This document shows positions 13,358 to 60,203 of a stretch of DNA of 64,000 bases, piece after piece. The stretch covers positions 1 through 64,000 of the IMG/VR virus record IMGVR_UViG_3300033143_006101; one strand, 5' to 3'. The notes beneath the pieces are model-generated. The model saw only the letters and a list, made by a program, of their open reading frames with translations. It ran no database searches and was not told the origin of the DNA. The number at the start of each line of letters is the position of its first letter. The first letter of the stretch is position 1. The position numbers and the translations under genes are program-made.

Positions 13358-13366
13358 AAATTTAAA

Positions 13367-13923: not shown

Positions 13924-14000
13924 GGGTTCTTAGCTTAGCTGGTCGAAAGCACTTGACTCATAATCAAGAGATTTCCTGGGTTCGAATCCCAGAGAGCCCA
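13924..14000 (+). tRNA. tRNA-CAT (Ile2/lysidine type or elongator Met)
   Basis: GGGTTCT/AGAGCCC acceptor; CTTGA-CTCATAA-TCAAG; TTCGAAT. Confidence 0.88.
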
Positions 14001-42913: not shown

Positions 42914-43354
42914 GTGGCAAGTGGATTACAAATAGTAAATGGAGATTTTGTTATAGGGCATACAGGAGCTGTTGAAATAGTTGAAAAAGGTCCTAAATGT
43001 CTACGTGATTTTGGAAAGATGCTTCAAACCAGTTCAGAATCTTCAGATAATCAAACAGAATACTTTAGGTATAATCCGACTTATGGTAGTCTATTAGATA
43101 AATTAATAACACATAATATGAGCAAAAGCACTATTCTAGAAATAGCAAGCTCTCTTTTATATGCTACAATACAAAATTATCTCGAATTACAGGAAACTAG
43201 AGACAATTTAACTGCAGGGGAAATTATAATAGATGTAAATTTTGATGTAAATTTTGATGTGCGTACCCCTGGACTTTTAGTAATCCCGATGTCGATAACT
43301 ACTTCAGAAGGAGTAACATATAATCTTGGGGAGTTTGAGCAGAGGTTCGTCTAA
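42914..43354 (+). CDS. baseplate wedge subunit (gp25-like)
   Basis: NGDFVIG...NPTYGSLL; directly upstream of gpJ. Confidence 0.7.
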   Translation: MASGLQIVNGDFVIGHTGAVEIVEKGPKCLRDFGKMLQTSSESSDNQTEYFRYNPTYGSLLDKLITHNMSKSTILEIASSLLYATIQNYLELQETRDNLTAGEIIIDVNFDVNFDVRTPGLLVIPMSITTSEGVTYNLGEFEQRFV

Positions 43355-44817: not shown

Positions 44818-44872
44818 TATTTTTTTAATAGTTAATGAGATATAAAAACTTCGTAAGAAGGAGCAAAATGAG

Positions 44873-46111: not shown

Positions 46112-46114
46112 TTT

Positions 46115-47185
46115 GTGGTGAAACAAAAGATATTAGTAGCAGGATCTGGTGGGATGATGGGATCTCATGCAGTAGATTATTTAATCAATAATTATGGAAA
46201 TGAATTTGAAGTGTACGGGGTGGACGATTTATCTGGATGCTACAAAGAAAATATTAATCCCAAATCAAAGTTTACTAAGATTGATTTAAGAGATGTAAAA
46301 GCAGTTAAAAAGTACTTTAAAAATAATTTTGGAAAAACAGGTATAGATTATGTGGTACATTACGCTTCTGCGGCTCATGAAATTAGGTCATTTTTTACTC
46401 CCATCGACAATATGTCTCGTAACGATGAGGCTTTCAGAAATGTTGTCACCTTTGCTTTAAAACATAAAGTAAAACATATAGTGTTTTTTAGTTCAATGAG
46501 TAGATATGGATCAGGAGTAGTAAAAGATGGAAATGGAAAAATAGTCATTAATCAAAAAGCACCATTTAGAGAATCTTATTTACCAGCTCCCGAAGACCCG
46601 TATGCATGCTCTAAAGTAGCATCGGAAAATCTATTACATGCATTACAAAATGTATTCGATTTCACTTATACTATTTGGATCCCTCACAATTGTTTTTCAC
46701 CGCGACAATATGTTGACCCATATCGTAATGTTTTAGCTATTTGGATGAATTTAGTACTATTAGGTAAAGAATGTGTTATCTATGGAACTGGGGAACAACA
46801 AAGAGCTATTTCTTGGGTGGATGATTTTAATCCTGTTATTTGCAAATCAATTATGGATCCAAAGACATATGGACAAGCATTCAATATTGGAGGAGATGAG
46901 AACAAATCTCTTAATGAATGGTATGATATTATAAGAGAAGTTACTGGATATGATAAAGAATCAGTACATTATGATCCTCGACCAGGAGAAGTCTTTAATG
47001 CATATTGTAAACATGATAAAGCAAAGCTTATGTTAGGATTTAAAAATGCTACTCCGTTTAAAGATGCTATTGCACAAATGTGGGAGTACTTTAAAAAGAA
47101 AGGACCGAGAAAATTTAATTATATAGATTATCTTGAGATTGAAAATGAAAAAGTACCAGTTACTTGGAAAAAGAAGTTATTTTAA
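46115..47185 (+). CDS. NAD-dependent nucleotide-sugar epimerase/dehydratase
   Basis: VAGSGGMMGS, FFSS, PYACSK (YxxxK), IYGTGEQQR, RPGEV. Confidence 0.9.
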   Translation: MVKQKILVAGSGGMMGSHAVDYLINNYGNEFEVYGVDDLSGCYKENINPKSKFTKIDLRDVKAVKKYFKNNFGKTGIDYVVHYASAAHEIRSFFTPIDNMSRNDEAFRNVVTFALKHKVKHIVFFSSMSRYGSGVVKDGNGKIVINQKAPFRESYLPAPEDPYACSKVASENLLHALQNVFDFTYTIWIPHNCFSPRQYVDPYRNVLAIWMNLVLLGKECVIYGTGEQQRAISWVDDFNPVICKSIMDPKTYGQAFNIGGDENKSLNEWYDIIREVTGYDKESVHYDPRPGEVFNAYCKHDKAKLMLGFKNATPFKDAIAQMWEYFKKKGPRKFNYIDYLEIENEKVPVTWKKKLF

Positions 47186-47200
47186 TAAGGAGAAAATGAT

Positions 47201-47824
47201 ATGATACTATTTGGAGATAAGATAGTTCCTTGGGAAGCTCAAGAATTTTTAAAAATACTTACTATTATTCAAGCAAATACAGTCATAGATTATATACGAT
47301 TAAATATGCTATGGCAATGTGCTAAACAAGTAATTACTTTAGATGGGGATGCTGCAGAAGTAGGAGTTTATAGAGGAGGTTCTGCAAGATTATTATCTGA
47401 AGTGTTACAAGGTAACTTGCATTTGTTTGATACTTTTGAGGGAATGCCGGAAACTAATCCAAATATAGATGTGCATAACGAAGGAGATTTTGCAAAAACT
47501 TCAATTGAAAAAGTAAAAACTTTTGTTGAAGCAGGACCAGGATCTGTCTATATCTACCAAGGTATTTTTCCGGAAACTGTAGAAGATTTTGATGAGGATA
47601 TTACATTTAAATTTGTTCATATAGATGTGGATATCTATAAATCTACAAAAGAAGGTTTTGAATTCTTTTACGATAAAATGATTTCAGGAGGAATTATGGT
47701 ATGTGATGATTATGGATTTAAAACATGCCCAGGTGCTAAAAAAGCTGTAGATGAATTTTTTAAAGATAGAGATGAAAACCCAATTTATATACCAACAGGA
47801 CAAGCAATAATAATAAAATTATAG
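47201..47824 (+). CDS. TylF/MycF/NovP-family sugar O-methyltransferase
   Basis: GDAAEVGVYRGGS, LFDTFEGMP, FVHIDVDIYKS, GGIMVCDDYG, GAKKAVDEF. Confidence 0.9.
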   Translation: MILFGDKIVPWEAQEFLKILTIIQANTVIDYIRLNMLWQCAKQVITLDGDAAEVGVYRGGSARLLSEVLQGNLHLFDTFEGMPETNPNIDVHNEGDFAKTSIEKVKTFVEAGPGSVYIYQGIFPETVEDFDEDITFKFVHIDVDIYKSTKEGFEFFYDKMISGGIMVCDDYGFKTCPGAKKAVDEFFKDRDENPIYIPTGQAIIIKL

Positions 47825-47834
47825 GTGGTGCCAT

Positions 47835-48587
47835 ATGGATGCTTTAGATTTAATTATAATTAGTGGGCTTCCTAGATCAGGAACAACTTATATCCACAAT
47901 GCACTTGCCAGATATGGTAAGAAAAGTAATATATTTGGTATTAGAAACGTAGTTAGGAATAGTAGATTTTGTGATTTAGAATTAGAAGATCATCAGTATG
48001 TAGAAACAGATGCTTTTTATGATTCTCCTTATTTTTCTAATTTTTTACCTGATTATAAGTTGCCTCATTGGATAACAAGTGAACCAGCAATATGTAATAC
48101 ATATAATGGTGATTTGACAGATATTGTATTACTATTATTAAAACATTGGAGAATAAAATTATCTAATCCAACATTAACTGTAATTTATAAACATCCACAA
48201 GCCAGTTTTAGAATACCTTTAACATTACCAAATAATAAAATTCTTTATATTATATGCAATAGAGAAAAAGAAAACTGGAAGAATGCTGTAATAAAAGATA
48301 AATTTACAGATAGTGTAGATATAAATGCTGGTGCTCCATGGGTAAAAGCAAATTGGGGAAAGGAATGGAAAGAACCAATAGAATTAGATGATAGATTAAA
48401 TCATTTATATACTATTTGGAACACTATTAATAACAAAATATTATCAGATCCAAATTTAATCACATTCGAATTTAGTTATGAAAATCCCGAAAGAGACACG
48501 AATAAAATTTTAAGTTATTTAAATTTAAAAGAATTTGTAAAAGATGCAATAAAAAATTGGAAACCATTAAATAAAAAAGGACAATAA
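47835..48587 (+). CDS. sulfotransferase-like protein
   Basis: N-terminal ISGLPRSGTT PAPS-binding loop; KHP; SYE. Confidence 0.65.
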   Translation: MDALDLIIISGLPRSGTTYIHNALARYGKKSNIFGIRNVVRNSRFCDLELEDHQYVETDAFYDSPYFSNFLPDYKLPHWITSEPAICNTYNGDLTDIVLLLLKHWRIKLSNPTLTVIYKHPQASFRIPLTLPNNKILYIICNREKENWKNAVIKDKFTDSVDINAGAPWVKANWGKEWKEPIELDDRLNHLYTIWNTINNKILSDPNLITFEFSYENPERDTNKILSYLNLKEFVKDAIKNWKPLNKKGQ

Positions 48588-49367
48588 ATGAATCTATTAG
48601 GTGGATCTTTATTCGTACATAACGGATTAAAATATGATTATTGTTTAAAAGAAGCTGTAGAGAGTCTTTTAGATTTGTGTGATGAAGTAGTTATACTTGA
48701 TGCCGAAAGTGACGATGGTACTTTAGATTTTTTACATAAAATGGCTAAGGAACATTCCAATTTAAAAGTATATGATCATGGAAAATGGGAATGTGCATCA
48801 GACTGGAATAGATTACGACTACTTGCTAATGAAACAAAAAATATATTAAATACCGAATGGCATTTCATGCTTCAAGCAGATGAAGTTATACATGAAAATT
48901 CTTTTGATGCAATTCGAAAAGCTATAAGTGATTCCCAAAAACACGATACTTTTTGGGGGTACAGAATAAATGTGTTTAAAGATTTTGATCATTATATAGC
49001 GTTTAATAGTAAAACCAAACCATGCGGGGATAAGATAATTAGATTAGGAAAAACGTATATTGATGCTATAGGAGATGCTGAATCATTAAGTCTAACACAT
49101 CATAGTAATAAATATTTATCAAAAATAATAATGTTTCATTATGGTATAATAAGAAAACCGGATATTATGTTAGATAAATATATAAGCATGCAATCATGGT
49201 TTTTTGATCATGGGAAAATAGATCCAAGAATATTAGAGATGAAAAAAACAGATGGAATATTTAAACCAGAAAAAATAATAGAAGGTATAACATTAGATAA
49301 ACTTAAATGGACACATCCTAAATATGCTGAAGAATGGGTAAAAGAACGAAGACATTTTTATGAATAA
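48588..49367 (+). CDS. GT2-family glycosyltransferase
   Basis: CDEVVILDAESDDGT, WHFMLQADE, MFHYG. Confidence 0.85.
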   Translation: MNLLGGSLFVHNGLKYDYCLKEAVESLLDLCDEVVILDAESDDGTLDFLHKMAKEHSNLKVYDHGKWECASDWNRLRLLANETKNILNTEWHFMLQADEVIHENSFDAIRKAISDSQKHDTFWGYRINVFKDFDHYIAFNSKTKPCGDKIIRLGKTYIDAIGDAESLSLTHHSNKYLSKIIMFHYGIIRKPDIMLDKYISMQSWFFDHGKIDPRILEMKKTDGIFKPEKIIEGITLDKLKWTHPKYAEEWVKERRHFYE

Positions 49368-49388
49368 CATAAAGTAGGAGAAAAATAG

Positions 49389-51128
49389 ATGAATAACTTT
49401 ACAAGTATTATAATAATTAATTGGAATGGGGTTCGATTTTTAACAACGGCTATTAGTTCTCTTTACAGATTCAGGAATAAAACTCCTTTTGAAATAATTA
49501 TAGTAGATAATGGATCCACAGATAAAAGTGTAAAGTATATAAAACGTATCACACATGAAAAATCAAATATAATAGCTATTTTTAATAAAGATAATAAAGG
49601 TTTTACAGTTGCTAATAACCAAGGAATAGAAGCTGCTACTGGAAAATATGTAATGCTTTTAAATAATGATATAGAAATAAGAGGCAGTGAATGGTTAGAT
49701 AAAATGATTAATTTTCTAATAATAAATCCAGAAGCAGGTGTAATAGGACCGCGTGGTGGAATTCTAACTAAAAGTTTAGAATTTATAGGCATAAAACCAA
49801 ATGAATATAATGGTATGGTAGATTATATCGAAGGATGGTGTTTTTTATTTAAAAGATCACTTGCTGAAAAAATTAAATTATGTCGTGAAGAACTATGGGA
49901 TATGAAAGCAAATTATCTATGTGAAGAAATGTTTATCTTTGCTGAAGATTCAGAATTTTGCCAACGTTCTAAAATGTTAGGACACGAATGTTATCAAATA
50001 GGTAACGTACCTATTCATCATTTTGGAAATTCCACTATTAAACATCAAGTAAAAGAAAATCCCGATGCAGATTACGATTATAAAGATGTAAGTAATGATA
50101 GTACTCAAATATTAAAAAATCTATTAAATAATAAACAATTAGTTAATACTGATATAAAAAAGATTTTAATAATGAGAGGTAATGCTAGAGGAGATGTTTT
50201 AAATACCACACCAGCTATAAAAGCATTAAGAAAAAAACATCCTGATGCTTTTATAGGTTTTGTTTGTTTTTATCCTTCTTTTGATATTTTAAATCTAAAT
50301 CATGATTTGGATTGTGTTTTTCCTGTTCTTGAAGAAACAATACATGGATTTCATCCAAAATTACTTCAGTTTGAATGGGATGAAATATATCATTTAGGAG
50401 ACAAAATGTTTCCAAGTATGAAGACAGTCATAGACCATTTTTACAATAGTGATGCAATAATAGATACTAAACATGAATTAATGGCTTCGCAGGATGTGAG
50501 TACAAGAATGAAAAGAGGAGCAGCAAAGAAACCTTATTCTAAGATTTTTGCTGAAATGATTAATATTGAATTAGATGATTTAAAACCTACTTTAAATATC
50601 AGCTCAAAAGTAATAAATGATGCCAAAAAGTTATTACAACATTTAGATAAAAAAAGAAAAACAGTAGCTTTATGTCTTGATTCTCATTGGATAACACGTA
50701 CTTACCCTATACCCAAAAGAACAAATATAATACATAGTTTATTAAAAGAATACAATGTAGTATTATTAGGAATAAGTAGTTATCGATTTAAAACACCTGA
50801 AGCTAATCATTTTGTTAATCTATTAAATCGAACATCAATAGAGTTATTATGTGCTATATTAAATCAAATTGATGCTATTGTTACAATAGATACATTAACA
50901 CTTCATATAGGTTTAGCTTATAAAAAACCAATGGTATCTCTATGGAATATAACAGAACCATTTCATGTAATGTCATACCAACCAAAGAATCAAATAAAAT
51001 TATTTTCGGATTTAGCATGTTCACCATGTTATTTAGAAGTCTGCACAAATCATAATTATGCTTGTTACAACCAACTCTTCCCAGAACGAATTGTAGATGC
51101 ATTACATTATTTAATAAAGGATAAATAA
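49389..51128 (+). CDS. GT2 + GT9 (heptosyltransferase-like) fusion
   Basis: N-term IIVDNGSTD, NKGF..ANNQG, LLNND, EDSE; C-term RGDVLNTTPAIKALRKKHPDA, TIDTLTLHIG, CSPC...C...C. Confidence 0.85.
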   Translation: MNNFTSIIIINWNGVRFLTTAISSLYRFRNKTPFEIIIVDNGSTDKSVKYIKRITHEKSNIIAIFNKDNKGFTVANNQGIEAATGKYVMLLNNDIEIRGSEWLDKMINFLIINPEAGVIGPRGGILTKSLEFIGIKPNEYNGMVDYIEGWCFLFKRSLAEKIKLCREELWDMKANYLCEEMFIFAEDSEFCQRSKMLGHECYQIGNVPIHHFGNSTIKHQVKENPDADYDYKDVSNDSTQILKNLLNNKQLVNTDIKKILIMRGNARGDVLNTTPAIKALRKKHPDAFIGFVCFYPSFDILNLNHDLDCVFPVLEETIHGFHPKLLQFEWDEIYHLGDKMFPSMKTVIDHFYNSDAIIDTKHELMASQDVSTRMKRGAAKKPYSKIFAEMINIELDDLKPTLNISSKVINDAKKLLQHLDKKRKTVALCLDSHWITRTYPIPKRTNIIHSLLKEYNVVLLGISSYRFKTPEANHFVNLLNRTSIELLCAILNQIDAIVTIDTLTLHIGLAYKKPMVSLWNITEPFHVMSYQPKNQIKLFSDLACSPCYLEVCTNHNYACYNQLFPERIVDALHYLIKDK

Positions 51129-51129
51129 T

Positions 51130-51462
51130 ATGAAAGGAAAGTGTGCGAAAGTAACTACTATAGCTATAATAGTAAATAATGGTGAATACTGGGTAGGAAC
51201 AAATTGGTGTGAAATCCCACAAGAAACGTGCCCAAGAGATGAACAAGGTTTTAAAACAGGTGAAGGGTATGAGTTATGTAAAGATGTTTGTTTACAGAGA
51301 TATCATGCAGAAATAGATGCTTGCATTAATGCTGGATTAAATGCGAAAGGAGCAGATTTGTATTTAATAGGTCATTACTATTGTTGTGATGATTGTAAGA
51401 AAGTCATGAAAGAATTTGGTATAAAAAATATTCATATATTTAGTAAATCAGATAAGGAATAG
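51130..51462 (+). CDS. zinc-dependent cytidine/dCMP deaminase-like protein
   Basis: HAEIDA...GADLYL...CCDDC. Confidence 0.75.
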   Translation: MKGKCAKVTTIAIIVNNGEYWVGTNWCEIPQETCPRDEQGFKTGEGYELCKDVCLQRYHAEIDACINAGLNAKGADLYLIGHYYCCDDCKKVMKEFGIKNIHIFSKSDKE

Positions 51463-51465
51463 AAA

Positions 51466-52191
51466 ATGGAAAAATGCATTTGTAATCATAAAAAAACAAT
51501 AGAATCTTTTACTATCAAAGTTAATGAAATGGAATTAATATATGCACGGTGCAATAATTGTTTATCATACAGAATGATGAATCCTCTTAATACTGAAGAA
51601 ATACTTGAATATTATAATAAAGAAAAACCAACTCGAGTATCTGCAGATTTTAGAAAAGCTTTAGCACATACTGCAAATGAGGATTTTAAAGCATTAAAAC
51701 AATATAATACAGATCATGTATGTAGAGGAAAAAGATTATTAGATATAGGATGTTCAGAAGGTACTTTTGTCCAGGTTACTGCACAACGAAAATATGATGC
51801 TTATGGAATAGATATAGCTACTGAATTAATTGCATATGGAAAAGAAAGAGGGGTGGCTCTTGAAGTAGCAGATTACTTATCATTTAATAAACAATCTTGG
51901 GATATAATAACATTACATGATGTATTAGAACATGTATATCAACCAAGAAAATATTTAGAAAAAGCTTACACAGAGTTAACTCCTAGTGGAATAATCCAAC
52001 TTAGATTTCCAGCATATATTTATGCTAATAATTTGGAAACATGGGGGCATGCAAGAACAGATCATAATTGGTTGTTTAATATACAAGGGCTTATTGTAAC
52101 ATTAACTGAGATAGGATTTGAAAATTTCAGAGTCCTAGATTACAAGCATGGGGCATACCCGGGTTGTGTTATGATTATGTGCCAAAAATAA
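51466..52191 (+). CDS. class I SAM-dependent methyltransferase with N-terminal zinc motif
   Basis: LLDIGCSEG, YGID, DIITLHDVLEH, LTPSG. Confidence 0.85.
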   Translation: MEKCICNHKKTIESFTIKVNEMELIYARCNNCLSYRMMNPLNTEEILEYYNKEKPTRVSADFRKALAHTANEDFKALKQYNTDHVCRGKRLLDIGCSEGTFVQVTAQRKYDAYGIDIATELIAYGKERGVALEVADYLSFNKQSWDIITLHDVLEHVYQPRKYLEKAYTELTPSGIIQLRFPAYIYANNLETWGHARTDHNWLFNIQGLIVTLTEIGFENFRVLDYKHGAYPGCVMIMCQK

Positions 52192-52217
52192 ATGAGATGA
52201 ACTAAAAGGAGATTAAT

Positions 52218-53180
52218 ATGAATTTAGGAAAGGATCCCATTATTCAACGATGGGAAAATAATTACGATGAAAATGTACTTAATAAAGCATTTAACGGAGA
52301 AGATGTAAGACCTTATAAATTTTTACTAAATAATACACATTATCATAATGTTCCAGTAGTGCTGGTGGCTGCAGGACCATCATTAGATAATAATCTAAAA
52401 TACCTTAAAGATTTTCAGAAAAATGCTATTATTTTAGCAGTTGATGTTATCCTTTTTAAACTACTAGAATACGACATAATACCAGATTTTGTGGTTAATA
52501 TAGACCCTTCTGATATGTTTATTCGCTTTTGGGAGGATTTAGACACATCAAATTTAACTCTTATTTGTCCCACAACAACACATCCAAAAGTGCTACAAAC
52601 ATGGAAAGGAAGAAAGTTCTTTTATAATCAAATAGATCAAAAGAAATCAGAAAAAGGAAGAGCTCTTAAAAGATTAATAAAAACCACAGCGGGATATGGG
52701 AAAGTAATCAATCGCTATTTTATAGGAGCAACATCGGCTCAAATAGCATCAATATTCAATCCTGATCCTTTAATCTTGGTTGGATATGATTTTGCATATA
52801 CTGGTGGAAAAGCTTATTGTGACGGATTTTTAGAAAGAAAAATATACGATGACACAACAGAAAAAGGATCACCAGAACATATTAGAAATATTAATTCACT
52901 GAAGTATAGAGAACGAAATGAAGAAATGAAAGTAAAAGATATTTATGGTATGGAAGTATATACATCAAAACAGCTTAACTTTTATAGCATTGTATTAATT
53001 CATTTACTTTATAACGAATTACGCATTAAGAACGTAATTAATGCAACTGAAGGTGGTGTTCTAAAAGATACCCCAAACATGTCATTAAAAAATGCTTTAA
53101 ATCAATATTGTAAATCGGAAATCCAAAAGAAAGATGTATTTAGTTTAATTAAAAGAAAAAAGAAAAGGCGTAAGAAATGA
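52218..53180 (+). CDS. Maf/DUF115-family protein (motility-associated-factor glycosyltransferase-like)
   Basis: VLVAAGPSLDNN, IIPDFVVNIDP, LILVGYDFAY, VINATEGG. Confidence 0.8.
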   Translation: MNLGKDPIIQRWENNYDENVLNKAFNGEDVRPYKFLLNNTHYHNVPVVLVAAGPSLDNNLKYLKDFQKNAIILAVDVILFKLLEYDIIPDFVVNIDPSDMFIRFWEDLDTSNLTLICPTTTHPKVLQTWKGRKFFYNQIDQKKSEKGRALKRLIKTTAGYGKVINRYFIGATSAQIASIFNPDPLILVGYDFAYTGGKAYCDGFLERKIYDDTTEKGSPEHIRNINSLKYRERNEEMKVKDIYGMEVYTSKQLNFYSIVLIHLLYNELRIKNVINATEGGVLKDTPNMSLKNALNQYCKSEIQKKDVFSLIKRKKKRRKK

Positions 53181-55738
53181 TAGGTGATATAAATAATTTT
53201 GTTCTATCCTCTAGAAGTCTAGAAAACGGCACAACAACTCTTACTTTTGAATTCGATAAGCCTAGTGGAGATTATGGTGCTTACAAATTATACCAGAAAC
53301 TTGCTGGTGGAGGTTTTGAAGAAGCCAAATTAAGAATAGATTATGCTCATTATAAAGAAGATTATGAAGCTGATTACACCTACGAAGCAAACAATAAAGT
53401 TTATTTCGAATACTCTTTTGGACCAGGAATAACAGATGGCAGATTAATAGAATTCAGATTAAGGGCTATCTCTGTTGCAAACGAACTCTCAAATCCTTCT
53501 TCAACTTTAGATATCTATATAGCACCTTCTATACCAACAAATTTTTTAACTACTTATAATGGTTATGAAATAAATCTAGATTGGGATGATTTAAATACTT
53601 CTACAGGAATGAATTCTCACGTATTAAATTTTATTGTTAGAAGAAAGGGTGTCACAGAAATTCCTACTAGTGCAGTAGAATATGATACAGAAACATATAC
53701 ACTTACACATACATCATTTACAAAAGGATCAGCATTATGGGTAATTGATATTGCTAAAAGAAGTAAATGGTTTGGTAATATAACAACAGAAGGTGAATTT
53801 GTTTTATCAGATGCAAATAAAATTACTTTATCAAGTGACACTGCCTCAAACTATACTATTTTAAAAGATAATCTAAGATTTTTGATAGAGAAGAGCTCAG
53901 ATATAACAAATTTAGGATATCCAACTACAAGTGCTTTTATAGATACTACTTTTACAATTGATTATTATTATATATATACTGTAGCTGTTGAAGGGGGAGA
54001 TAGTCAAGAAAGTGAAGAAGTTAAATTTCCTTTATTTGCAATAGATGTTAATAAAGCATATCCTTATTTAAGATCCCCGGGTAATTCGGACAATGAAATA
54101 TTACAACAACCTTATTGGAAATATCTAAAAGAAGTTTTAATTGATGCAAACTATTATGATAAAACACAATTTGCAATTCCTTTTTTTAAACATGAAGAGT
54201 ATAATCTAAAAGGATATATAGGAGTTAGTGAATGTAAAGTAGATATATTCGTTAATAATATCTATGATCATACAGTAATATCGGGTACTTATGGAGAATT
54301 TGATATAGATTATCCATTTAAGAAAGGAGAAACAGAAATCTATATTCAAGCCAGGGATAAATACAATATAAAATTCTCAAGAAAGAGTGCCCCTTATAGT
54401 ATTAGAACACTTAATATGTATACATGGTTTTCTGCATTAGGTAAAGAATACAAAGAGATAGTAGATACTATTTTAGAAATTAGAAATACTGTGGATATAA
54501 CTAATGTAACTTATGGTGTCTATCAAGATGTTTATGCTCCTTTTATAGAGATATATAAATCTGGGGATGAAGATAGTGATGCTTTTATGACTATGGCATC
54601 AGAAGTATTTAAAGCATTTGAATATGCTGCATACGATAAAAGCTTAGAGATGGTATTAGATGCCTTTCAAGCGAAAATCCCAGAGTTTGATCATTATGAA
54701 TTATTTTTTAATAATGATCATGTGGAAACACATAAATCAGGAGGAACATTTACATATAGAGATAGCGTATTATCCGGGTTAAATTATTGGTATGGTATTT
54801 CAGCTTTTAATACTAGTACTGGAGCAGAAACAGATGCTACAACAATAAGAGTAGATAGAAGATGGTGGGAAAGAGGATATAATGGTATCAATGTTATAAC
54901 ATGGGATGAAATTAAAAATGCTGATAATTATAAAATATATAAAGGATCCGATGAAGAGGAATTGGCTTATATTACAACTACTCCAGCTAATTTATATTGT
55001 GATATAGGACAACATGCAGAAATTGTATCTAATACACCACGGTTGTTTAATTATACTAGTTTAGATAAACCCAGTAATATAGTAGTGGATAATGGTGTTT
55101 ATGTAACAAAAATCCATGAAAGACTTAAAAAACCCAATGCAATGACTATTGTTTTATTCGGAGTAGGTTATCAAGAAATTCCAGATATGGAAATGTATAG
55201 AATTCGGATTTTATTAGATAAACTTATTCCTCCAGAAATAAGATATACATTACTCTTTGCTCGGGATCCAGAAGTCGATGTTATAATTGGTAAAGAGATT
55301 ACTGCTAATGGTATCCATTACATGCTTAGTGGAGATATCTGGTCCGGATTATATTTAGATATTACAAACTCTAACCCACTCGAAGTAGTTACATCTAATG
55401 AGGTTCCTGAAGAATACTTAACATATACAGATATCGATGGTAGTACAGAAGAATATGATAATATAATTACAGCAATTTATCAATCAGATCCACAATCTGA
55501 TCCAAATGGGTTTAGTCATATTAGTTGGGAAGCAGATGGGGATCCTGGAGATATCATGTTTCAATACAGGATATCAGAAGATGGAATAACATTTAATGCA
55601 TGGTCAGAAGAAATAGATGCCATTGAAAATAGTATTAAAGTTTTTAGTGAAGATCCTGTTTCATTCGAATACAGACTTGTATTTTACTCTCCAAATTGGA
55701 GTGATACTGATAACGTAAGAGTTTTAGAGATAGTATAG
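53177..55738 (+). CDS. baseplate wedge/fibre-attachment protein with Fn3-like domains
   Basis: Fn3-like segments (FRLRAISVANELSNPS, YIYTVAV, ITWDEIKNADNYKIY); LDKLIPPEIRY resembles the gpI/gp7 C-terminus. Confidence 0.6.
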   Translation: MIGDINNFVLSSRSLENGTTTLTFEFDKPSGDYGAYKLYQKLAGGGFEEAKLRIDYAHYKEDYEADYTYEANNKVYFEYSFGPGITDGRLIEFRLRAISVANELSNPSSTLDIYIAPSIPTNFLTTYNGYEINLDWDDLNTSTGMNSHVLNFIVRRKGVTEIPTSAVEYDTETYTLTHTSFTKGSALWVIDIAKRSKWFGNITTEGEFVLSDANKITLSSDTASNYTILKDNLRFLIEKSSDITNLGYPTTSAFIDTTFTIDYYYIYTVAVEGGDSQESEEVKFPLFAIDVNKAYPYLRSPGNSDNEILQQPYWKYLKEVLIDANYYDKTQFAIPFFKHEEYNLKGYIGVSECKVDIFVNNIYDHTVISGTYGEFDIDYPFKKGETEIYIQARDKYNIKFSRKSAPYSIRTLNMYTWFSALGKEYKEIVDTILEIRNTVDITNVTYGVYQDVYAPFIEIYKSGDEDSDAFMTMASEVFKAFEYAAYDKSLEMVLDAFQAKIPEFDHYELFFNNDHVETHKSGGTFTYRDSVLSGLNYWYGISAFNTSTGAETDATTIRVDRRWWERGYNGINVITWDEIKNADNYKIYKGSDEEELAYITTTPANLYCDIGQHAEIVSNTPRLFNYTSLDKPSNIVVDNGVYVTKIHERLKKPNAMTIVLFGVGYQEIPDMEMYRIRILLDKLIPPEIRYTLLFARDPEVDVIIGKEITANGIHYMLSGDIWSGLYLDITNSNPLEVVTSNEVPEEYLTYTDIDGSTEEYDNIITAIYQSDPQSDPNGFSHISWEADGDPGDIMFQYRISEDGITFNAWSEEIDAIENSIKVFSEDPVSFEYRLVFYSPNWSDTDNVRVLEIV

Positions 55739-55748
55739 GAGATAATTC

Positions 55749-58700
55749 ATGCCATATATTACAGTTCCTACCAGAACCCAAACACTGTCATCAATGTATG
55801 CAGATATAAATCAGCTACAATCTAATATAAATGCGATGTTAGATGCATCCAAAGCGTTTACTGATTTAGCTGTTGATGAAGATGTAACATTTAGCGGTCT
55901 TACAGCAATGCGATTACTTGCTATTGATTCATCTAATAAAGTAGTAAATACTAATTTAAATCAATGGATAAATGGTACCGGTAATCAAATTACTGTTACA
56001 GATAATGGTAATGGAACAGTTACTATGTCTGCTCCTCAAGATATTCATTCTGGGGCATCTCCTACTTTTGCTGACTTGACTCTATCTTCTCCCTCTACAA
56101 TATATGGTTTAGATCATGATAGTTTTGCTGGTTATGTGGCAGCAGAGCATTTAAATTGGACAGTAAATACCGGAAGTGTTATTGATGATAATAACATAGC
56201 TGCAAGTTCAATTACACAACATGAAGGTAGTATTACTCATAACAATTTAGCAGGAGTTACAGCTAAAGAACATATAGATTGGACAGTTGATGCTGATCCA
56301 TATAATGTACATAAATTAAATATCACATGGGATTCTATAACACAACATGAAGCTCAGATCAATCATGACAATTTATTTGGATTTGTAGCACTTGAACATA
56401 TCGATTGGACTAATGCAACTCAGAATATAGATACAAGTGGTACAATTAATGGTACTACTTTAAAATATAATGAAATAGATATAAATAATAGTAACGCTCT
56501 TAGTAATGTAGTCTATTTAGATATAGACAATACATTTCTAGAAAATATGATTATAACAAAAGATCTTACTGTTATAGGTGATTTTATTGTAATAGGTGAT
56601 ACATATGCTGCAGAAGTTGAAACAGTGCTTATTTCAGATAATCTTGGTATTATTAATTATGGTGAGACTGGTACAGGCATAACAGCTGGTTTTGCTGGTT
56701 GGGAAGTAGATAGAGGTATTTATGCCGCTCCTTATAGATGGGGATTTGAGGAATCTACTGATACTTGGAGATTAGGTGAATCCTATTATGATATAGATGT
56801 AACTACTTCAACCGGAACTTTTGTAGTAGGAGATATAATTTTAACATCTACTGGAGAACGTGGTAAGGTGTTTGATATTACTGGAAGCGTTTTATCTACA
56901 GGTGTTCATGTAGGTGTTTTTTCTACAGGAATGTATGTATATACTTCTACTGGTGCAGCTGGAACAATCACATCCGTATCAGAAGTTGAATCTTTGCAAG
57001 CAGTTGCAACTCGAGAAGATAGTCCTACTTTAAATGGAATACCTTATTGGAATAATACACTTAAACAATTTAATACAAGTTCGAGTATTGTTTGGGATAC
57101 TTCAACGACAGGAGCAGCTAAAGGAGATCTATTAATACGTAGTAGTACTGGATTTACAAGATTAGCTGTTGGATCCAATGGACAAACAATAATAGCGGAT
57201 AGCTCTGAAACTACAGGGATTAAATGGGCCGGGCATGATTCACTTGATGAATATGTTGCCAATGAACATATAGATTGGACGGGGGCCAGTGCTGGAACAA
57301 TTGATCCTACAAATTTAGGATTACATGCAAGTCGACATGAAATTGGTGGGGCTGATCTTATAGATCATGATAATTTAACAAACACACATGATCTTACAAC
57401 TGACATTGATCACGATACAATTACAAATAATCATAATCTTACAACTGATATTGATCATGATCAATTAACAAATTTTGTTGCAAATAAACATATAGATTGG
57501 ACAGGAGCTAGTAATAATCTAGTTACATCTGGATACATTAGAATATCTAATAATGAAATTAGATTTTATGACAATGGATCCAATTATGTAGGATTTAAAG
57601 CTCCCGCTTTAACAGGAGATCAAATTTGGACACTACCTGATTCTGATGGAACTACAGGTCAAGTCCTAGCAACAAGTTCTGGTTTATTATATTGGTCTGA
57701 TATAGTTGCAACTTCTGTCATTTCGGATTCAGATGGTAATACATTATTAGGAACCGGTACAGGTACTAATTTAAGTTCACCTGATGCAACATATAATACT
57801 TTTATTGGTGTTAATGCTGGCTATGATGTCACAACAGGTGATTATAATTGTTATATAGGATATTATGCTGGTGAGAATACAGGAGTTGATGTACAATACC
57901 AAACATTTATTGGTGCCTATGCTGGACAGAACAACACTGCTAGTTATGCTACAGCAATTGGATATCAAGCCGGTTTAGCTTGTGCAGGTACTGGTGTAGC
58001 TATAGGGTATCTAGCTGGACAATCTGGTTTAAGTTATGGTGTGGCTATAGGACAGGAGTGTGCTACTGGAGGATTAGGATCAAGAAGTGTAGCAATAGGT
58101 TATAAATCATGTTTTGGTAATGCTAATGGAGCTCAAGATTGTGTCTTTGTAGGATATACAGCCGGTTTAAATAATGCAGGTGGTGATGGAAATACAGGAG
58201 TGGGTGCTAGTGCATGTAAAAATGCTGGTGCTAAAACTGGTAATACTGCTATAGGTAACCATAGTCAATATGATGCTTCTGGTAATTATAATACATCCTT
58301 TGGTGCTCATTCACTATATGATTGTGGTGGTGGTTATAATGTAGCAGTAGGCTATGAAGCTGGACATTTTGTAACTAATAATTATAATATACTTATAGGA
58401 TTTCAAGCTGGTTATAGATGTCAAGGTAGTTATAATATAGGTATTGGACGAAAAGCATGTGGAAATGATACAGGAGGAACTAAAGATTATAATGTTGCTA
58501 TAGGAGATATCTCCCTAACTGCAATAACTACTGCTGTTGATAATACTGCTATAGGTACTAATTCAGGAAGTGTTTTAACTACTGGTTCTTCTAATGTGTT
58601 AATAGGTCATGATGCTGGTAGTACTTTAACAACTGAATCAAATCTACTTTATATAGAAAATACAAATTCTGCAACACCCCTCATTTATGGTGAATTTGAT

Positions 58701-59363
58701 AATGATTTATTAAAAATAAATGGTATTCTTCAAATAGATCAAGCTGATGCAGATACAAATATTCTAACTTTTGAAAGTTCAGATATAGCACATGCTTTAA
58801 CAAGTTGGATGCCCACAAATACTTTTACTGCTTTTACTAAATTATCCGCAACTGGTGGTGGACTTCAAGTATCTGTTGCTACTGATGGTGATGAAACAAT
58901 TCAAACAGCTCTATCTACTCGAGTAGCATTAAGAGATGTTGCAGATACTTCTACATCTACTGGAAGTATTGGTGTTATAGAATTCGATAGTTATCAACAT
59001 GATGGTGCTGATAATCTATCTGCTATAGCTGATGACGGTGATATTTTCTGTGTAAGAAATAATGGTGATACCAAATTCATTATAAAAGGTGATGGAGATA
59101 TTTATTATGATGGTGCAGATCAAGGAACTTATGATACTGAAAATGATATAGCATTAACTGGAGCAATAAATAATCCCAATAGCCAGGAATACGGTAGATT
59201 ACAAGAACTTGGTATTGTAGATAATGGTTTTATTAGTAGAAAGAAATTAGACGCTCTTACTGTTGGTTCAATAGGCCAACTTTGGAATATAATTAGACAT
59301 TTATCTAAGAAGTTTGATGTATCAGAAGATGAGCTTTTTGAAATGGCCAAAAATTATAATTAA
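55749..59363 (+). CDS. tail fibre/adhesin with His-rich repeats and YadA-like Gly-Asn beta-repeats
   Basis: HD.L..FVA.EHIDWT repeats; N(T/V)AIG..AG repeats. Confidence 0.75.
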   Translation: MPYITVPTRTQTLSSMYADINQLQSNINAMLDASKAFTDLAVDEDVTFSGLTAMRLLAIDSSNKVVNTNLNQWINGTGNQITVTDNGNGTVTMSAPQDIHSGASPTFADLTLSSPSTIYGLDHDSFAGYVAAEHLNWTVNTGSVIDDNNIAASSITQHEGSITHNNLAGVTAKEHIDWTVDADPYNVHKLNITWDSITQHEAQINHDNLFGFVALEHIDWTNATQNIDTSGTINGTTLKYNEIDINNSNALSNVVYLDIDNTFLENMIITKDLTVIGDFIVIGDTYAAEVETVLISDNLGIINYGETGTGITAGFAGWEVDRGIYAAPYRWGFEESTDTWRLGESYYDIDVTTSTGTFVVGDIILTSTGERGKVFDITGSVLSTGVHVGVFSTGMYVYTSTGAAGTITSVSEVESLQAVATREDSPTLNGIPYWNNTLKQFNTSSSIVWDTSTTGAAKGDLLIRSSTGFTRLAVGSNGQTIIADSSETTGIKWAGHDSLDEYVANEHIDWTGASAGTIDPTNLGLHASRHEIGGADLIDHDNLTNTHDLTTDIDHDTITNNHNLTTDIDHDQLTNFVANKHIDWTGASNNLVTSGYIRISNNEIRFYDNGSNYVGFKAPALTGDQIWTLPDSDGTTGQVLATSSGLLYWSDIVATSVISDSDGNTLLGTGTGTNLSSPDATYNTFIGVNAGYDVTTGDYNCYIGYYAGENTGVDVQYQTFIGAYAGQNNTASYATAIGYQAGLACAGTGVAIGYLAGQSGLSYGVAIGQECATGGLGSRSVAIGYKSCFGNANGAQDCVFVGYTAGLNNAGGDGNTGVGASACKNAGAKTGNTAIGNHSQYDASGNYNTSFGAHSLYDCGGGYNVAVGYEAGHFVTNNYNILIGFQAGYRCQGSYNIGIGRKACGNDTGGTKDYNVAIGDISLTAITTAVDNTAIGTNSGSVLTTGSSNVLIGHDAGSTLTTESNLLYIENTNSATPLIYGEFDNDLLKINGILQIDQADADTNILTFESSDIAHALTSWMPTNTFTAFTKLSATGGGLQVSVATDGDETIQTALSTRVALRDVADTSTSTGSIGVIEFDSYQHDGADNLSAIADDGDIFCVRNNGDTKFIIKGDGDIYYDGADQGTYDTENDIALTGAINNPNSQEYGRLQELGIVDNGFISRKKLDALTVGSIGQLWNIIRHLSKKFDVSEDELFEMAKNYN

Positions 59364-59375
59364 GGAGAATATACA

Positions 59376-59669: not shown

Positions 59670-59709
59670 AGTATACTTTAAATAAAATTTTAAACTAAGG
59701 AGAAATGAA

Positions 59710-60192: not shown

Positions 60193-60203
60193 AGAGGAAA
60201 GAG

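What the first reader, a model, noticed from the sequence alone, without database searches (positions are those of the whole stretch)
52218..53180. Phage-encoded Maf/DUF115 protein: candidate initiating or capping Ser/Thr glycosyltransferase
Seen: AAGPSL / PDF..IDP / GYDFAY / INATEGG motifs. Established: Maf proteins are implicated in transferring nonulosonic acids (pseudaminic/legionaminic) to flagellin Ser/Thr, although the Pfam family also covers MptE-like enzymes. Inference: flagellin-type glycosylation repurposed for virion proteins using host CMP-sugars.
Basis: partly seen in the sequence, partly recalled or inferred. Interest (0 to 1): 0.6.

Follow-up and report, generated by a model that had tools for sequence, protein, structure and literature searches.

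The report
Phage tail-module Maf-like glycosyltransferase
A complete 253-kb uncultivated jumbo phage carries a stripped-down relative of the bacterial enzymes that put sialic-acid-like sugars on flagellin; it is the one conserved gene of an otherwise highly variable sugar cassette next to the tail-fibre genes, so it probably glycosylates the phage's own tail proteins, but its sugar donor and target are untested.

Summary
ORF 52218..53180 (+, 320 aa) is a real, conserved gene with all four quoted motifs. It matches Pfam PF01973 (E 5e-34).

It falls on the Maf side of that family, not the MptE kinase side:
- Solved Maf (5mu5): Z 23.3 over 250 residues.
- MptE kinase (8sd5): Z 13.2.
- The two acidic residues essential in Maf are kept (D96, D191).

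It is not a canonical Maf:
- It has the central domain only. The Maf N- and C-terminal domains are absent.
- The Ser required for activity in two tested Mafs is Phe in 63 of the 64 aligned sequences; the exception is the outlier P0064.
- No flagellar genes are nearby.
- The complete phage genome has no NeuB, CMP-sugar synthetase, KdsA, sugar-1-phosphate nucleotidyltransferase or DegT aminotransferase.

In nine related metagenomic phage contexts it is usually the last gene of a non-homologous sugar/glycosyltransferase cassette. The cassette lies between baseplate genes and large Fn3-rich or fibre-like proteins.

Best reading: a phage-specific, core-only Maf subfamily that acts as the protein-directed glycosyltransferase for tail proteins and uses host nucleotide sugars. 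Verdict on the interpretation: partly supported. Novelty: new variant of a known kind.

The parts
52218..53180 (+). Core-only Maf-family (PF01973/DUF115) glycosyltransferase-like gene, 320 aa
   Evidence: ORF. PF01973 E 5e-34. NCBIfam PseD domain model E 1e-14 over residues 32-305, far below the family cut-off. AlphaFold model pLDDT 92.8. 5mu5 Maf Z 23.3, rmsd 2.9 A, 250 aa aligned.
52206..52211 (+). Shine-Dalgarno AAGGAG, 6 nt upstream of the ATG
   Evidence: Read directly from the sequence.
52368..52388 (+). A51-A-G-P-S-L-D57, glycine-rich nucleotide-binding loop after the first strand of the Rossmann-like core
   Evidence: P54 and D57 are invariant and A52, G53 and S55 nearly invariant in the phage clade; A51 is conserved in the 13 short rows sampled. 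The loop is conserved in cellular Mafs and aligned to the same loop of 5mu5 and MptE 8sd5.
52503..52505 (+). Codon of D96, equivalent to the essential E324 of M. magneticum Maf (D272 in CbMaf)
   Evidence: HMMER alignments to 5mu5. Mutational data quoted in bioRxiv 10.1101/2020.06.03.131540. D or E in 39 of 40 aligned family members.
52710..52742 (+). Residues 165-175, loop N-R-Y-F-I-G-A-T-S-A-Q. It replaces the T-G-G-S-V-x-T-T-A-L-D loop of cellular Mafs; F168 sits where the catalytically required Ser lies.
   Evidence: F168 lies 23 residues before D191, as S334 does before D357 in CbMaf and T392 before D415 in 5mu5. Column counts: F in 63 of 64 aligned sequences (the exception is P0064), Ser/Thr in 25 of 27 long Mafs. 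The loop was not seen in any of the 80 best cellular loci.
52788..52790 (+). Codon of D191 (GYDFAY), equivalent to the essential D415 of M. magneticum Maf (D357 in CbMaf)
   Evidence: Alignment to 5mu5. D in 39 of 40 aligned members.
53040..53057 (+). N275-A-T-E-G-G280 motif
   Evidence: N275, T277, E278, G279 and G280 are invariant in the phage clade. T-E-G-G is nearly invariant in cellular Mafs.
46115..52191 (+). Variable sugar-modification cassette upstream of the Maf-like gene. It holds an SDR 4,6-dehydratase/epimerase (46115-47185), a TylF-type O-methyltransferase (47201-47824), a weak sulfotransferase-like gene (47835-48587), a weak GT2-like gene (48588-49367), a GT2+GT9 fusion (49389-51128), a 110-aa cytidine/dCMP-deaminase-fold protein (51130-51462) and a SAM methyltransferase (51466-52191).
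   Evidence: Pfam, PHROG and NCBIfam scans. Apart from one weak match of the dehydratase to L004, these genes have no homologue at E<1e-5 in the equivalent cassettes of the four main-clade loci compared (L001, L004, L005, L010; L009 also showed none), while the flanking genes do.
43354..46111 (+). Conserved upstream flank: baseplate J-like wedge protein (43354-44817) and a conserved 412-aa protein of unknown function (44873-46111)
   Evidence: PF04865 and phrog_6. 51-52% identity to the same two genes in L005. The same pair precedes the cassette in other relatives.
53177..55738 (+). 853-aa Fn3/Ig-array protein. Its start overlaps the stop of the Maf-like gene. It is the prime candidate acceptor or partner.
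   Evidence: 38 homologues of 32-55% identity, many on contigs of the same length as those holding Maf-like homologues. It directly follows the Maf-like gene in L001 and L010 and lies downstream in L005. Model pLDDT 76. Fold matches to Fn3 arrays and to phage tail fibre, tip attachment J and minor tail proteins.
55749..59363 (+). 1204-aa tail-fibre/spike-like protein, Ser/Thr-rich (19.5%), with a cluster of S-T-G motifs at residues 354-400
   Evidence: phrog_4636 tail spike E 1.4e-11 and phrog_6002 virion structural protein. Motif census.
60204..63998 (+). Large fibre-like protein that runs off the window (at least 1265 aa). In L004 its homologue directly follows the Maf-like gene.
   Evidence: ORF list. 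blastp E 5e-179 to the 1810-aa protein of L004, and matches in L001 and L010.

Best explanation
The gene encodes a phage-specific, central-domain-only member of the Maf (DUF115/PF01973) glycosyltransferase family.

Shown:
- It has the fold of the Maf catalytic domain, a sialyltransferase-like variant of GT-A.
- It keeps the nucleotide-binding loop (AAGPSLD), both acidic residues essential in Maf (D96, D191) and the NATEGG motif.
- It is under strong purifying selection in about 63 metagenomic relatives.
- It is the conserved, usually last, gene of a sugar cassette whose other genes are non-homologous between related phages. The cassette sits between baseplate J and large Fn3/fibre proteins, in one tightly packed co-directional block.

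Inferred:
- During late infection it works in the host cytoplasm as the protein-directed (initiating) O-glycosyltransferase.
- It puts the first sugar, taken from a host-made nucleotide sugar, onto Ser/Thr of a tail protein. The translationally coupled 853-aa Fn3-array protein and the Ser/Thr-rich fibres are the candidates.
- The variable GT2/GT9 enzymes then extend that sugar, and the methyl- and sulfo-transferases decorate it. The result would be a lineage-variable glycan coat on the adsorption apparatus.

The donor is open. Family analogy points to a CMP-activated ulosonic acid (Kdo or a nonulosonic acid). However, the loop carrying the Ser needed by tested Mafs is rebuilt (N-R-[F/Y]-F), so the donor or its binding mode may have changed.
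For: Family and fold:
- PF01973 E 5e-34.
- 5mu5 Maf is the only sequence hit in PDB for the single protein and the best hit for profiles.
- Foldseek: 5mu5 E 4e-9 against MptE 3e-5.
- VIA-align: Z 23.3 against 13.2, followed by GT29 and GT42 sialyltransferases.

Catalytic residues:
- D96 aligns with MmMaf E324 and D191 with MmMaf D415.
- Both are essential according to the work quoted.

Conservation:
- Twelve invariant residues, including the motifs, across 64 sequences.
- The phage clade is monophyletic, SH-aLRT 98.

Context:
- Nine main-clade contexts place it at the tail-gene end of a sugar cassette.
- The flanks are conserved and the cassette is not.
- ATGA overlap with the Fn3-array gene.
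- No excess of terminator-like sites in the block.

Host donors:
- The complete genome lacks NeuB, CTP_transf_3, NTP_transferase, DegT and KdsA. GT2 domains occur only in the cassette.

Analogy for the initiating role:
- Maf attaches the linking sugar directly to flagellin Ser/Thr.

Ulosonic-acid hints within phages:
- A distant short phage homologue (P0064, L009) lies 5 kb from PseB-, PseC-, NeuB- and cytidylyltransferase-like genes in a tail module.
- A 55%-identical relative's genome carries a stand-alone KdsB-like cytidylyltransferase.
- CbMaf and GkMaf accept CMP-Kdo.

Closest cellular look-alikes:
- They are 302-320-aa core-only forms in Nitrospinota. The one examined lies directly after fliK-flgD-flgE.
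Against: - No activity, donor or acceptor has been measured.
- F168 replaces the Ser whose Ala mutant is inactive in CbMaf and GkMaf. The enzyme could have a different donor, a different mechanism or reduced activity.
- The N- and C-terminal Maf domains are absent. [quoted passage not shown] How a protein acceptor would be recognised is therefore unknown.
- Cassettes in relatives make dTDP/NDP-sugars, including bona fide RmlA and RmlC in L004. None makes nonulosonic acids.
- None of the nine main-clade contexts has NeuB or CTP_transf_3 within the up to 10 kb shown on each side.
- Gene order alone does not prove a virion target.
- In L004 the 853-aa family is not next to the gene. In L005 three genes intervene.
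Confidence: 0.5

Rival explanations
1. The enzyme elongates or caps a glycan. It adds a sugar, possibly a terminal ulosonic acid, to a chain started by another cassette enzyme such as the GT2 or GT9 domain. It does not act on protein Ser/Thr itself.
For: - GT42 and GT29 sialyltransferases, the next-best folds, act on glycan acceptors.
- A Maf-fold protein was predicted to be a capsule alpha-Kdo transferase acting on a polysaccharide in E. coli K15.
- The domains that might bind a protein substrate are missing.
Against: - The acceptor glycan would differ between phages because the rest of the cassette is non-homologous. Yet the enzyme is 45-55% identical across them with an invariant active-site surface.
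- In L004 no other Pfam-recognisable glycosyltransferase lies in the 10 kb upstream. That locus is cut at its start.
Confidence: 0.2
2. The cassette, including the Maf-like enzyme, modifies the host cell surface (LPS, capsule or S-layer) during infection, for example to block superinfection or to stop progeny sticking to debris. It would not modify the virion.
For: - Jumbo-phage glycosyltransferase clusters have been read as outer-polysaccharide modification systems (Iyer et al.).
- The cassette has a GT9 heptosyltransferase-like domain and a GtrB-like GT2 hit.
Against: - The cassette holds a fixed position inside the baseplate/tail-fibre block in every relative examined.
- The gene is translationally coupled to a structural-type Fn3 protein.
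- No flippase, polymerase or undecaprenyl-phosphate transferase family was detected in the cassette.
Confidence: 0.12
3. It is a catalytically impaired or non-catalytic Maf-fold protein that serves as an assembly factor, chaperone or sugar-binding module for tail-fibre maturation.
For: - The Ser required in tested Mafs is lost.
- It is always adjacent to large fibre-type genes.
Against: - Both essential acidic residues, the nucleotide loop and the NATEGG motif are invariant or nearly so. Strict conservation of this kind is not expected for a mere scaffold.
- The replaced loop is itself strictly conserved: N165, F168, G170, A171 and T172 in 62-63 of 64 sequences.
Confidence: 0.1
4. It is an MptE-like 6-hydroxymethyl-dihydropterin pyrophosphokinase or another small-molecule pyrophosphokinase.
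For: - The Pfam family is named after MptE.
- MptE 8sd5 is the second-best structural match, and thiamine pyrophosphokinases appear at Z 7-8.
Against: - Maf scores much higher by sequence profile (43.8 against 26.9 bits; 90.1 against 47.7 bits) and by fold (Z 23.3 over 250 aa against Z 13.2 over 191 aa).
- The MptE alignment ends at model residue 277 of 320, whereas the Maf alignment runs to residue 310.
- The neighbours are sugar enzymes, not folate or pterin genes.
Confidence: 0.02
5. It is a DNA-base hypermodification glycosyltransferase acting on phage DNA.
For: - Phage glycosyltransferase clusters can decorate hydroxymethyl-pyrimidines (cited).
- The window has a thymidylate-synthase-like gene (599-2404) and a deaminase-fold gene inside the cassette.
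Against: - No Maf-fold enzyme is known to act on DNA.
- The cassette is embedded in tail genes, far from the nucleotide-metabolism gene.
- The Pfam thymidylate-synthase match is weak and below its cut-off, though three thymidylate-synthase PHROGs also match at E 6e-8 to 7e-9.
Confidence: 0.04

Closest known systems
Maf (motility-associated factor) flagellin nonulosonic-acid O-glycosyltransferases, e.g. Magnetospirillum magneticum Maf (PDB 5mu5), C. botulinum CbMaf, G. kaustophilus GkMaf
   Same: - Same Pfam domain and same fold of the catalytic central domain (Z 23.3, rmsd 2.9 A, 250 aa).
- Same AAGPSLD loop, the two essential acidic residues and the [N/D]-A-T-E-G-G motif.
- The gene sits beside the gene of a large surface-exposed filament or fibre protein, amid variable sugar genes.
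   Different: - 320 aa against 430-670 aa. It has no Maf_flag10_N domain and no C-terminal helical domain.
- The TGGS loop is replaced by N-R-[F/Y]-F, so the required Ser is Phe168.
- It is encoded by a phage tail module, not a flagellar locus.
- There is no pse/leg/neu pathway in the genome.
- At most 33% identity to any cellular homologue in a scan of one genome per species.
Core-only (302-320 aa) Maf-like proteins of Nitrospinota flagellar loci (e.g. L018, directly after fliK-flgD-flgE)
   Same: - Same length and single-domain architecture.
- Best structural cluster in the ESM Atlas: TM 0.81/0.84 over 285 residues.
- 25-29% identity over nearly the full length.
   Different: - They keep the canonical P-G-G-[S/T]-V loop.
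- They are cellular and flagellum-associated.
- They branch with the cellular long Mafs, not with the phage clade.
MptE, archaeal 6-hydroxymethyl-7,8-dihydropterin pyrophosphokinase (PDB 8sd5)
   Same: Same Pfam family. They share the N-terminal Rossmann-like half, including the GAGPS loop and the I-x-P-D motif.
   Different: - Clearly more distant: E 2e-5 against 1.6e-10, and Z 13.2 against 23.3.
- 241 aa.
- The profile alignments to 8sd5 cover only the N-terminal half, and the structural alignment stops at model residue 277, whereas Maf aligns to residue 310.
- MptE is an archaeal cofactor-biosynthesis enzyme.
GT42 (Cst-I/Cst-II) and GT29 sialyltransferases
   Same: Same variant GT-A fold class that uses CMP-sugars. 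Fold matches at Z 8.2-9.5 over about 185 residues and Foldseek E 1.5e-3 for Cst-II.
   Different: - No detectable sequence family membership.
- The Z scores lie in the range the tool itself calls common.
- Their acceptors are glycans, not proteins.
Virion glycosylation of mycobacteriophages (Freeman et al. 2023, cited in PMC12619734)
   Same: Phage-encoded glycosyltransferases placed next to structural genes that modify the phage's own virion proteins.
   Different: - There the enzymes belong to other glycosyltransferase families and the targets are capsid and tail-tube C-termini.
- No Maf-type enzyme is involved.
- The host group differs.

Membership tests
Maf flagellin nonulosonic-acid glycosyltransferases | Central Maf_flag10 / PF01973 domain | tested here: met
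   PF01973 E 5.1e-34, residues 25-196. The NCBIfam PseD domain model aligns residues 32-305 at E 1e-14, but 54 bits is far below the 670-bit cut-off.
Maf flagellin nonulosonic-acid glycosyltransferases | Fold of the Maf catalytic domain (modified GT-A, sialyltransferase-like) | tested here: met
   Model pLDDT 92.8. 5mu5_A Z 23.3, rmsd 2.9 A, 250 aa, model 6-310 against chain 242-528. Foldseek E 4.2e-9.
Maf flagellin nonulosonic-acid glycosyltransferases | Two essential acidic residues (MmMaf E324 and D415; CbMaf D272 and D357) | tested here: met
   D96 and D191 align with them. Each is conserved in 39 of 40 aligned members. Essentiality is as quoted.
Maf flagellin nonulosonic-acid glycosyltransferases | Conserved Ser/Thr of the T-G-G-S loop (CbMaf S334, GkMaf S356, MmMaf T392), required for activity | tested here: not met
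   The position is F168. It is F in 63 of 64 aligned sequences, against S or T in 25 of 27 long Mafs.
Maf flagellin nonulosonic-acid glycosyltransferases | Three-domain architecture (Maf_flag10_N, central domain, helical C-terminal domain) | tested here: not met
   No PF20157 or PF26154 hit. The whole protein aligns to residues 242-528 of the 666-aa 5mu5 sequence. PF20157 was detected in a long relative used as a control.
Maf flagellin nonulosonic-acid glycosyltransferases | Location in a flagellar or flagellin-glycosylation locus | tested here: not met
   The neighbours are baseplate, sugar-cassette and tail-fibre genes of a phage.
Maf flagellin nonulosonic-acid glycosyltransferases | Co-occurrence with a CMP-nonulosonic acid pathway (NeuB/PseI/LegI plus a cytidylyltransferase) | tested here: not met
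   No PF03102 and no PF02348 in the complete 252,876-bp genome. None was seen in the up to 10 kb shown on each side of the gene in the eight related contexts examined. It is met only in the distant phage homologue L009. The host pathway is unknown.
Maf flagellin nonulosonic-acid glycosyltransferases | Transfer of a CMP-activated nonulosonic acid or Kdo to protein Ser/Thr | not testable with these tools
   This needs enzymology or glycoproteomics.
MptE-type 6-hydroxymethylpterin pyrophosphokinase | Closest sequence and structure relatives are MptE enzymes | tested here: not met
   8sd5 scores below 5mu5 in every comparison.
MptE-type 6-hydroxymethylpterin pyrophosphokinase | Archaeal pterin or folate biosynthesis context and a roughly 240-aa single domain | tested here: not met
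   Phage genome with sugar-enzyme neighbours. The 320-aa protein aligns to Maf through residue 310, whereas the MptE alignment ends at residue 277.
GT42/GT29 sialyltransferases | Sequence family membership and sialyl motifs | tested here: inconclusive
   Only fold-level similarity (Z 8.2-9.5; Foldseek E 1.5e-3). No sequence hit in PDB searches. No residue-level structural alignment was available.

The most novel reading that the evidence does not exclude
This phage clade is a new functional class of Maf enzyme. It would be a minimal, protein-directed O-glycosyltransferase that primes tail-fibre or Fn3 proteins with a host-supplied sugar. That sugar would be either Kdo from the universal Gram-negative CMP-Kdo pool or, after the TGGS-to-NRFF loop swap, a non-ulosonic NDP-sugar. 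The primed site would anchor a rapidly exchanging cassette-encoded glycan. The result would be a glycan-based diversification or shielding system for the receptor-binding apparatus of jumbo phages.
Probability: 0.25. Interest if true: 0.8.

Novelty: new variant of a known kind. Interest (0 to 1): 0.55.

Why it matters
- Virion glycosylation has been shown experimentally in phages only for mycobacteriophages, with other enzyme families.
- A conserved Maf-type enzyme anchoring a hypervariable glycan cassette next to tail fibres would extend self-glycosylation to a large uncultivated jumbo-phage lineage. It would also point to glycans as a variable layer on the host-recognition machinery, affecting host range, defence evasion and immune recognition.
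- For glycoengineering, a 320-aa Maf core would be a compact tool if it works without the accessory domains.
- The natural Ser-to-Phe loop replacement gives a direct handle on how Maf enzymes choose donors. It can be tested with a simple loop swap and a donor panel.
- My searches of the paper library found no description of phage-encoded Maf/DUF115 enzymes.

Tried and rejected
- INPHARED phage collection: no DNA match for the region and no protein match for the Maf-like protein. No isolate-phage annotation could be borrowed. Sheath and baseplate proteins hit only distant phages, namely Bacillus phage G, virus Rctr197k and Mycobacterium phage Phabba, at 23-30% identity. The host stays unknown.
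- PHROGs: no family for the Maf-like protein or the 853-aa protein.
- Complex prediction of the Maf-like protein with residues 1-680 of the 853-aa protein: no verdict, score 0.00. This is not evidence either way.
- The look-up of sequencing runs on 46100-56000: none was listed. No expression or environment data resulted, and read laying was not used.
- Promoter and terminator scan of 43000-60500: counts at or below the shuffled expectation. It gave no usable operon boundaries.
- The genome search could not reach the records behind L004, L005 and L010. Whole-genome absence of NeuB or KdsB-type genes could be checked only for the window's genome and for G001 and G002.
- The 414-aa protein of L004 has no Pfam hit. 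Whether the Maf-like enzyme is the only glycosyltransferase in that cassette stays open.
- The 'moraphage' jumbo-phage paper (PMC12619734) was read as a possible description of this lineage. Identity of the lineages was not established and the paper does not mention Maf.
- The family assignment was not open.
- The word search sees only proteins of 176-560 aa. Longer Mafs were instead covered by the genome scan, which is not limited by length.
- The MptE reading and the DNA-modification reading were considered and rejected (see rivals).
Full report
**1. The observation**

The window holds an ATG-initiated ORF at exactly 52218..53180 on the + strand (320 aa). An AAGGAG ribosome-binding site lies 6 nt upstream. 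The stop codon overlaps the start of the next gene in an ATGA.

The protein matches Pfam PF01973 (MptE-like/DUF115) at E 5.1e-34. It has about 63 homologues of 37-62% identity and similar length in metagenomic data, and the motifs are invariant or nearly so among them.

The window is part of a 252,876-bp virus record with direct terminal repeats, rated 100% complete. It carries nine tRNA genes, a tail sheath, a baseplate J protein and tail-spike/fibre-like proteins. The observation, including 'phage-encoded', is confirmed.

**2. Maf or MptE?**

PF01973 covers two groups: the flagellin glycosyltransferases (Maf) and the archaeal pterin pyrophosphokinase (MptE). Both now have solved structures. 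Every comparison places the phage protein nearer to Maf.

| Comparison | Maf (5mu5) | MptE (8sd5) |
|---|---|---|
| Single sequence vs PDB | only hit, E 4e-4 | no hit |
| Profile of 64 phage-clade sequences | E 1.6e-10, 43.8 bits | E 2.1e-5, 26.9 bits |
| Profile including cellular Mafs | E 1.1e-24 | E 8.6e-12 |
| Foldseek on the model | E 4.2e-9, 284 columns | E 3.2e-5 |
| VIA-align 2 on the model | Z 23.3, rmsd 2.9 A, 250 aa (model 6-310 on chain 242-528) | Z 13.2, 191 aa |

The AlphaFold model has pLDDT 92.8 and pTM 0.90. Below MptE in the fold ranking come GT29 sialyltransferases (Z 8.3-9.5) and the GT42 enzyme Cst-I (Z 8.2). The only NCBIfam hit is the PseD flagellin-modification domain model, at E 1e-14 and far below its cut-off.

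**3. How it differs from canonical Maf**

- **Architecture.** The whole protein corresponds to the central domain of the 666-aa M. magneticum enzyme. The N-terminal Maf_flag10_N domain is missing, and so is the helical C-terminal domain, which shows weak similarity to FliS and flagellin.
- **Kept residues.** D96 aligns with MmMaf E324 and D191 with MmMaf D415. These are the two residues reported as essential. Their CbMaf equivalents are D272 and D357.
- **Lost residue.** The third residue shown to be required is CbMaf S334 (GkMaf S356), 23 residues before the second Asp in a T-G-G-S loop. Here it is Phe168. In 63 of the 64 aligned sequences this loop reads N-[R/N/Q/K]-[F/Y]-F-[V/I]-G-A-T-M-x-Q; the exception is the outlier P0064, and this phage itself has Ser at the Met position. 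By contrast, 25 of 27 long cellular Mafs have Ser or Thr at that position.
- **The loop is phage-specific.** In the best 80 loci kept, none exceeded 33% identity and none carried the phage-type loop.
- **Phylogeny.** The phage clade is monophyletic (SH-aLRT 98) and separate from the cellular sequences.

The closest cellular look-alikes are 302-320-aa core-only proteins of Nitrospinota (Atlas TM 0.81/0.84). They keep P-G-G-[S/T]-V. In the one locus examined, the gene lies directly after fliK-flgD-flgE. A core-only Maf is therefore not unique to phages, but the rebuilt loop is.

**4. Genomic context**

In the window the gene closes a 7-kb block (46115-52191) with these genes:
- an SDR 4,6-dehydratase/epimerase
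- a TylF-type O-methyltransferase
- a weak sulfotransferase-like protein
- a weak GT2
- a GT2+GT9 fusion
- a small deaminase-fold protein
- a SAM methyltransferase

Upstream lie baseplate J and a conserved 412-aa protein. Downstream lie an 853-aa protein, a 1204-aa tail-spike-like protein and a protein of at least 1265 aa. All are co-directional, with gaps of 0-55 nt.

Eight further contexts of clade members show the same plan. These are L001/L008, L004, L005-7, L010 and the contigs of P0033, P0035, P0058 and P0021. In each, baseplate genes are followed by a sugar cassette, then the Maf-like gene, then proteins of 730-1810 aa without Pfam domains. In L005-7 three further cassette genes lie between the Maf-like gene and the large proteins.

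The cassette contents differ completely between phages:
- L004 carries rhamnose-pathway genes, with bona fide RmlA and RmlC, plus an aminotransferase, an ATP-grasp enzyme and a radical-SAM enzyme.
- L005 carries GT1 enzymes, DegT and an RmlA-like gene.
- L001 and L010 carry a HAD phosphatase, a nucleotidyltransferase, methyltransferases and a triple GT2.
- Other contigs carry a PglD-like acetyltransferase and an Asn-synthase-like amidotransferase.

A blastp comparison confirms this pattern. Baseplate J, the 412-aa protein, the Maf-like protein (45-55% identity) and the 853-aa protein (35-49% identity over 700 residues) are conserved. The window's cassette genes have no counterpart in the other loci, except for one weak match of the dehydratase.

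The Maf-like enzyme is thus the conserved anchor of a hypervariable glycan cassette within the tail module.

**5. The neighbouring 853-aa protein**

It has 38 homologues. Many sit on contigs whose lengths equal those of contigs holding Maf-like homologues, which indicates the same contigs. Its model (pLDDT 76) shows Fn3/Ig-type beta domains at 1-410, a helical bundle at 413-500 and more beta domains to about residue 700. Fold matches are to Fn3 arrays and to phage tail fibre, tip attachment J and minor tail proteins. It is a plausible peripheral tail protein and a candidate acceptor.

The 1204-aa protein is 19.5% Ser+Thr and has five S-T-G motifs within residues 354-400. This is suggestive only.

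**6. Donor**

The complete genome lacks the following:
- NeuB
- CTP_transf_3 cytidylyltransferases
- sugar-1-phosphate nucleotidyltransferases
- DegT aminotransferases
- KdsA

GT2 domains occur only in the cassette. All sugar donors must therefore originate in the host, possibly after remodelling by the phage dehydratase. 'Host nucleotide sugars' is supported. 'CMP-nonulosonates' is not, for two reasons: no main-clade context shows a NulO pathway, and the Ser-bearing loop is changed.

Three observations keep a ulosonic-acid donor alive:
- A distant short phage homologue (P0064, 31% identity, loop S-G-G-N) lies in a tail module 5 kb from PseB-, PseC-, NeuB/PseI- and cytidylyltransferase-like genes.
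- The 88%-complete genome of a 55%-identical relative (G001) encodes a stand-alone KdsB-like cytidylyltransferase elsewhere.
- Tested Mafs accept CMP-Kdo, according to the papers. From general knowledge, every Gram-negative host makes CMP-Kdo.

The host is unknown. The nearest isolate phages are very distant and no sequencing runs were listed.

**7. Mechanism proposed**

Shown:
- a Maf-type catalytic fold with an intact nucleotide loop and acid pair
- strong purifying selection
- fixed synteny with tail genes
- dependence on host sugar activation

Inferred:
- The enzyme acts in the cytoplasm on newly made tail proteins as the protein-directed, initiating O-glycosyltransferase.
- The variable GT2/GT9/GT1 enzymes extend the glycan, and the methyl-, sulfo- and acyl-transferases decorate it.

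The argument for initiating over capping runs as follows. An enzyme that stays 45-55% identical while the rest of the pathway is swapped should recognise the conserved partner, which is the protein, together with a conserved host-supplied donor. It should not recognise a glycan that changes from phage to phage. This role also matches that of Maf in flagellin glycosylation, where it attaches the sugar directly to Ser/Thr. I put this composite reading at about 0.5.

The rivals and their confidences are:
- glycan elongation or capping (0.2)
- host-surface modification (0.12)
- a non-catalytic maturation factor (0.1)
- DNA hypermodification (0.04)
- an MptE-like kinase (0.02)

**8. Comparison with what is known, and novelty**

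It works like a Maf and belongs to the Maf branch of PF01973, but it fails several defining features of canonical flagellin Mafs:
- the three-domain architecture
- the catalytic Ser
- the flagellar context
- the linked NulO pathway

I therefore file it as a new variant, a phage-specific core-only subfamily, and not as a plain new member.

Searches of the paper library for phage together with DUF115, motility-associated factor, or phage virion glycosylation with nonulosonic acids found no description of such an enzyme. Virion glycosylation itself is known from mycobacteriophages, with other enzyme families.

**9. Limits**

- All functional statements are inference from sequence, structure prediction and synteny.
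- The complex prediction gave no verdict and is not used as evidence.
- Only nine contexts were inspected, several without DNA, and each was limited to 10 kb per side.
- No alternative genetic code, read mapping or sequence repair was used.

Noticed in passing
window 599-2404 (+): A 601-aa ORF has weak thymidylate-synthase matches split around a LAGLIDADG domain (residues ~338-395). It looks like a thymidylate-synthase-type gene interrupted by an intein or homing endonuclease.
   Followed up: no
window 4735-14000 (+): Nine tRNA genes (His, Trp, Leu x2, Lys, Arg x2, Ile, Met) are scattered among small ORFs.
   Followed up: no
window 16000-20000: GC content rises to 0.39-0.40 against 0.27-0.36 elsewhere. 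The rise coincides with the 1707-aa ORF at 15819-20942, which is 18% Ser+Thr and has eight S-T-G motifs.
   Followed up: no
window 49389-51128 (+): A 579-aa fusion joins a GT2 domain (residues 6-131) to a GT9 heptosyltransferase-like domain (residues ~255-575). This is an unusual two-glycosyltransferase polypeptide in the cassette.
   Followed up: partly
window 51130-51462 (+): A 110-aa protein with the cytidine/dCMP-deaminase zinc-binding fold (PF00383 E 7.7e-6) sits inside the sugar cassette, two genes before the Maf-like gene. Its role there is unexplained.
   Followed up: no
window 47835-48587 (+): A 250-aa protein has only a weak N-terminal sulfotransferase match (PF13469 E 4.7e-4, below cut-off). 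If real, the glycan may be sulfated.
   Followed up: no
window 55749-59363 (+): The 1204-aa fibre-like protein carries a recurring E-H-[I/L]-[D/N]-W-T motif about five times in its first 600 residues, as well as the S-T-G cluster at residues 354-400.
   Followed up: partly
L009 1-16650: Another phage contig has weak tape-measure and tail-tube matches downstream. It carries acetyltransferase, PseB-, PseC-, NeuB/PseI- and cytidylyltransferase-like genes 5 kb from a 306-aa Maf-like gene. This looks like a phage-borne nonulosonic-acid pathway with its own short Maf.
   Followed up: partly
L093 6592-7305 (-) = G001:C1 about 122.6-123.3 kb: A stand-alone KdsB-like cytidylyltransferase (PF02348 E 7e-29) occurs in the 217.7-kb relative that holds L001, among genes without Pfam matches. 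The family is absent from the window's own genome.
   Followed up: partly
L018 5827-10867: In a Nitrospinota genome a 307-aa core-only Maf-like gene directly follows fliK, flgD and flgE. This suggests a flagellar role for minimal Mafs, possibly hook-related.
   Followed up: partly
L006 (GCA_035453705.1, labelled Methanofastidiosum sp.): This MAG contig carries baseplate J, the same cassette and the Maf-like gene as the metagenomic phage contigs L005 and L007. It is probably a phage contig binned into an archaeal MAG, so the 'Methanofastidiosum' label on the protein is doubtful.
   Followed up: partly
L001 5551-6636 (+): A LAGLIDADG homing-endonuclease gene sits in the middle of the sugar cassette of the relative phage. 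This may be relevant to how these cassettes are exchanged.
   Followed up: no
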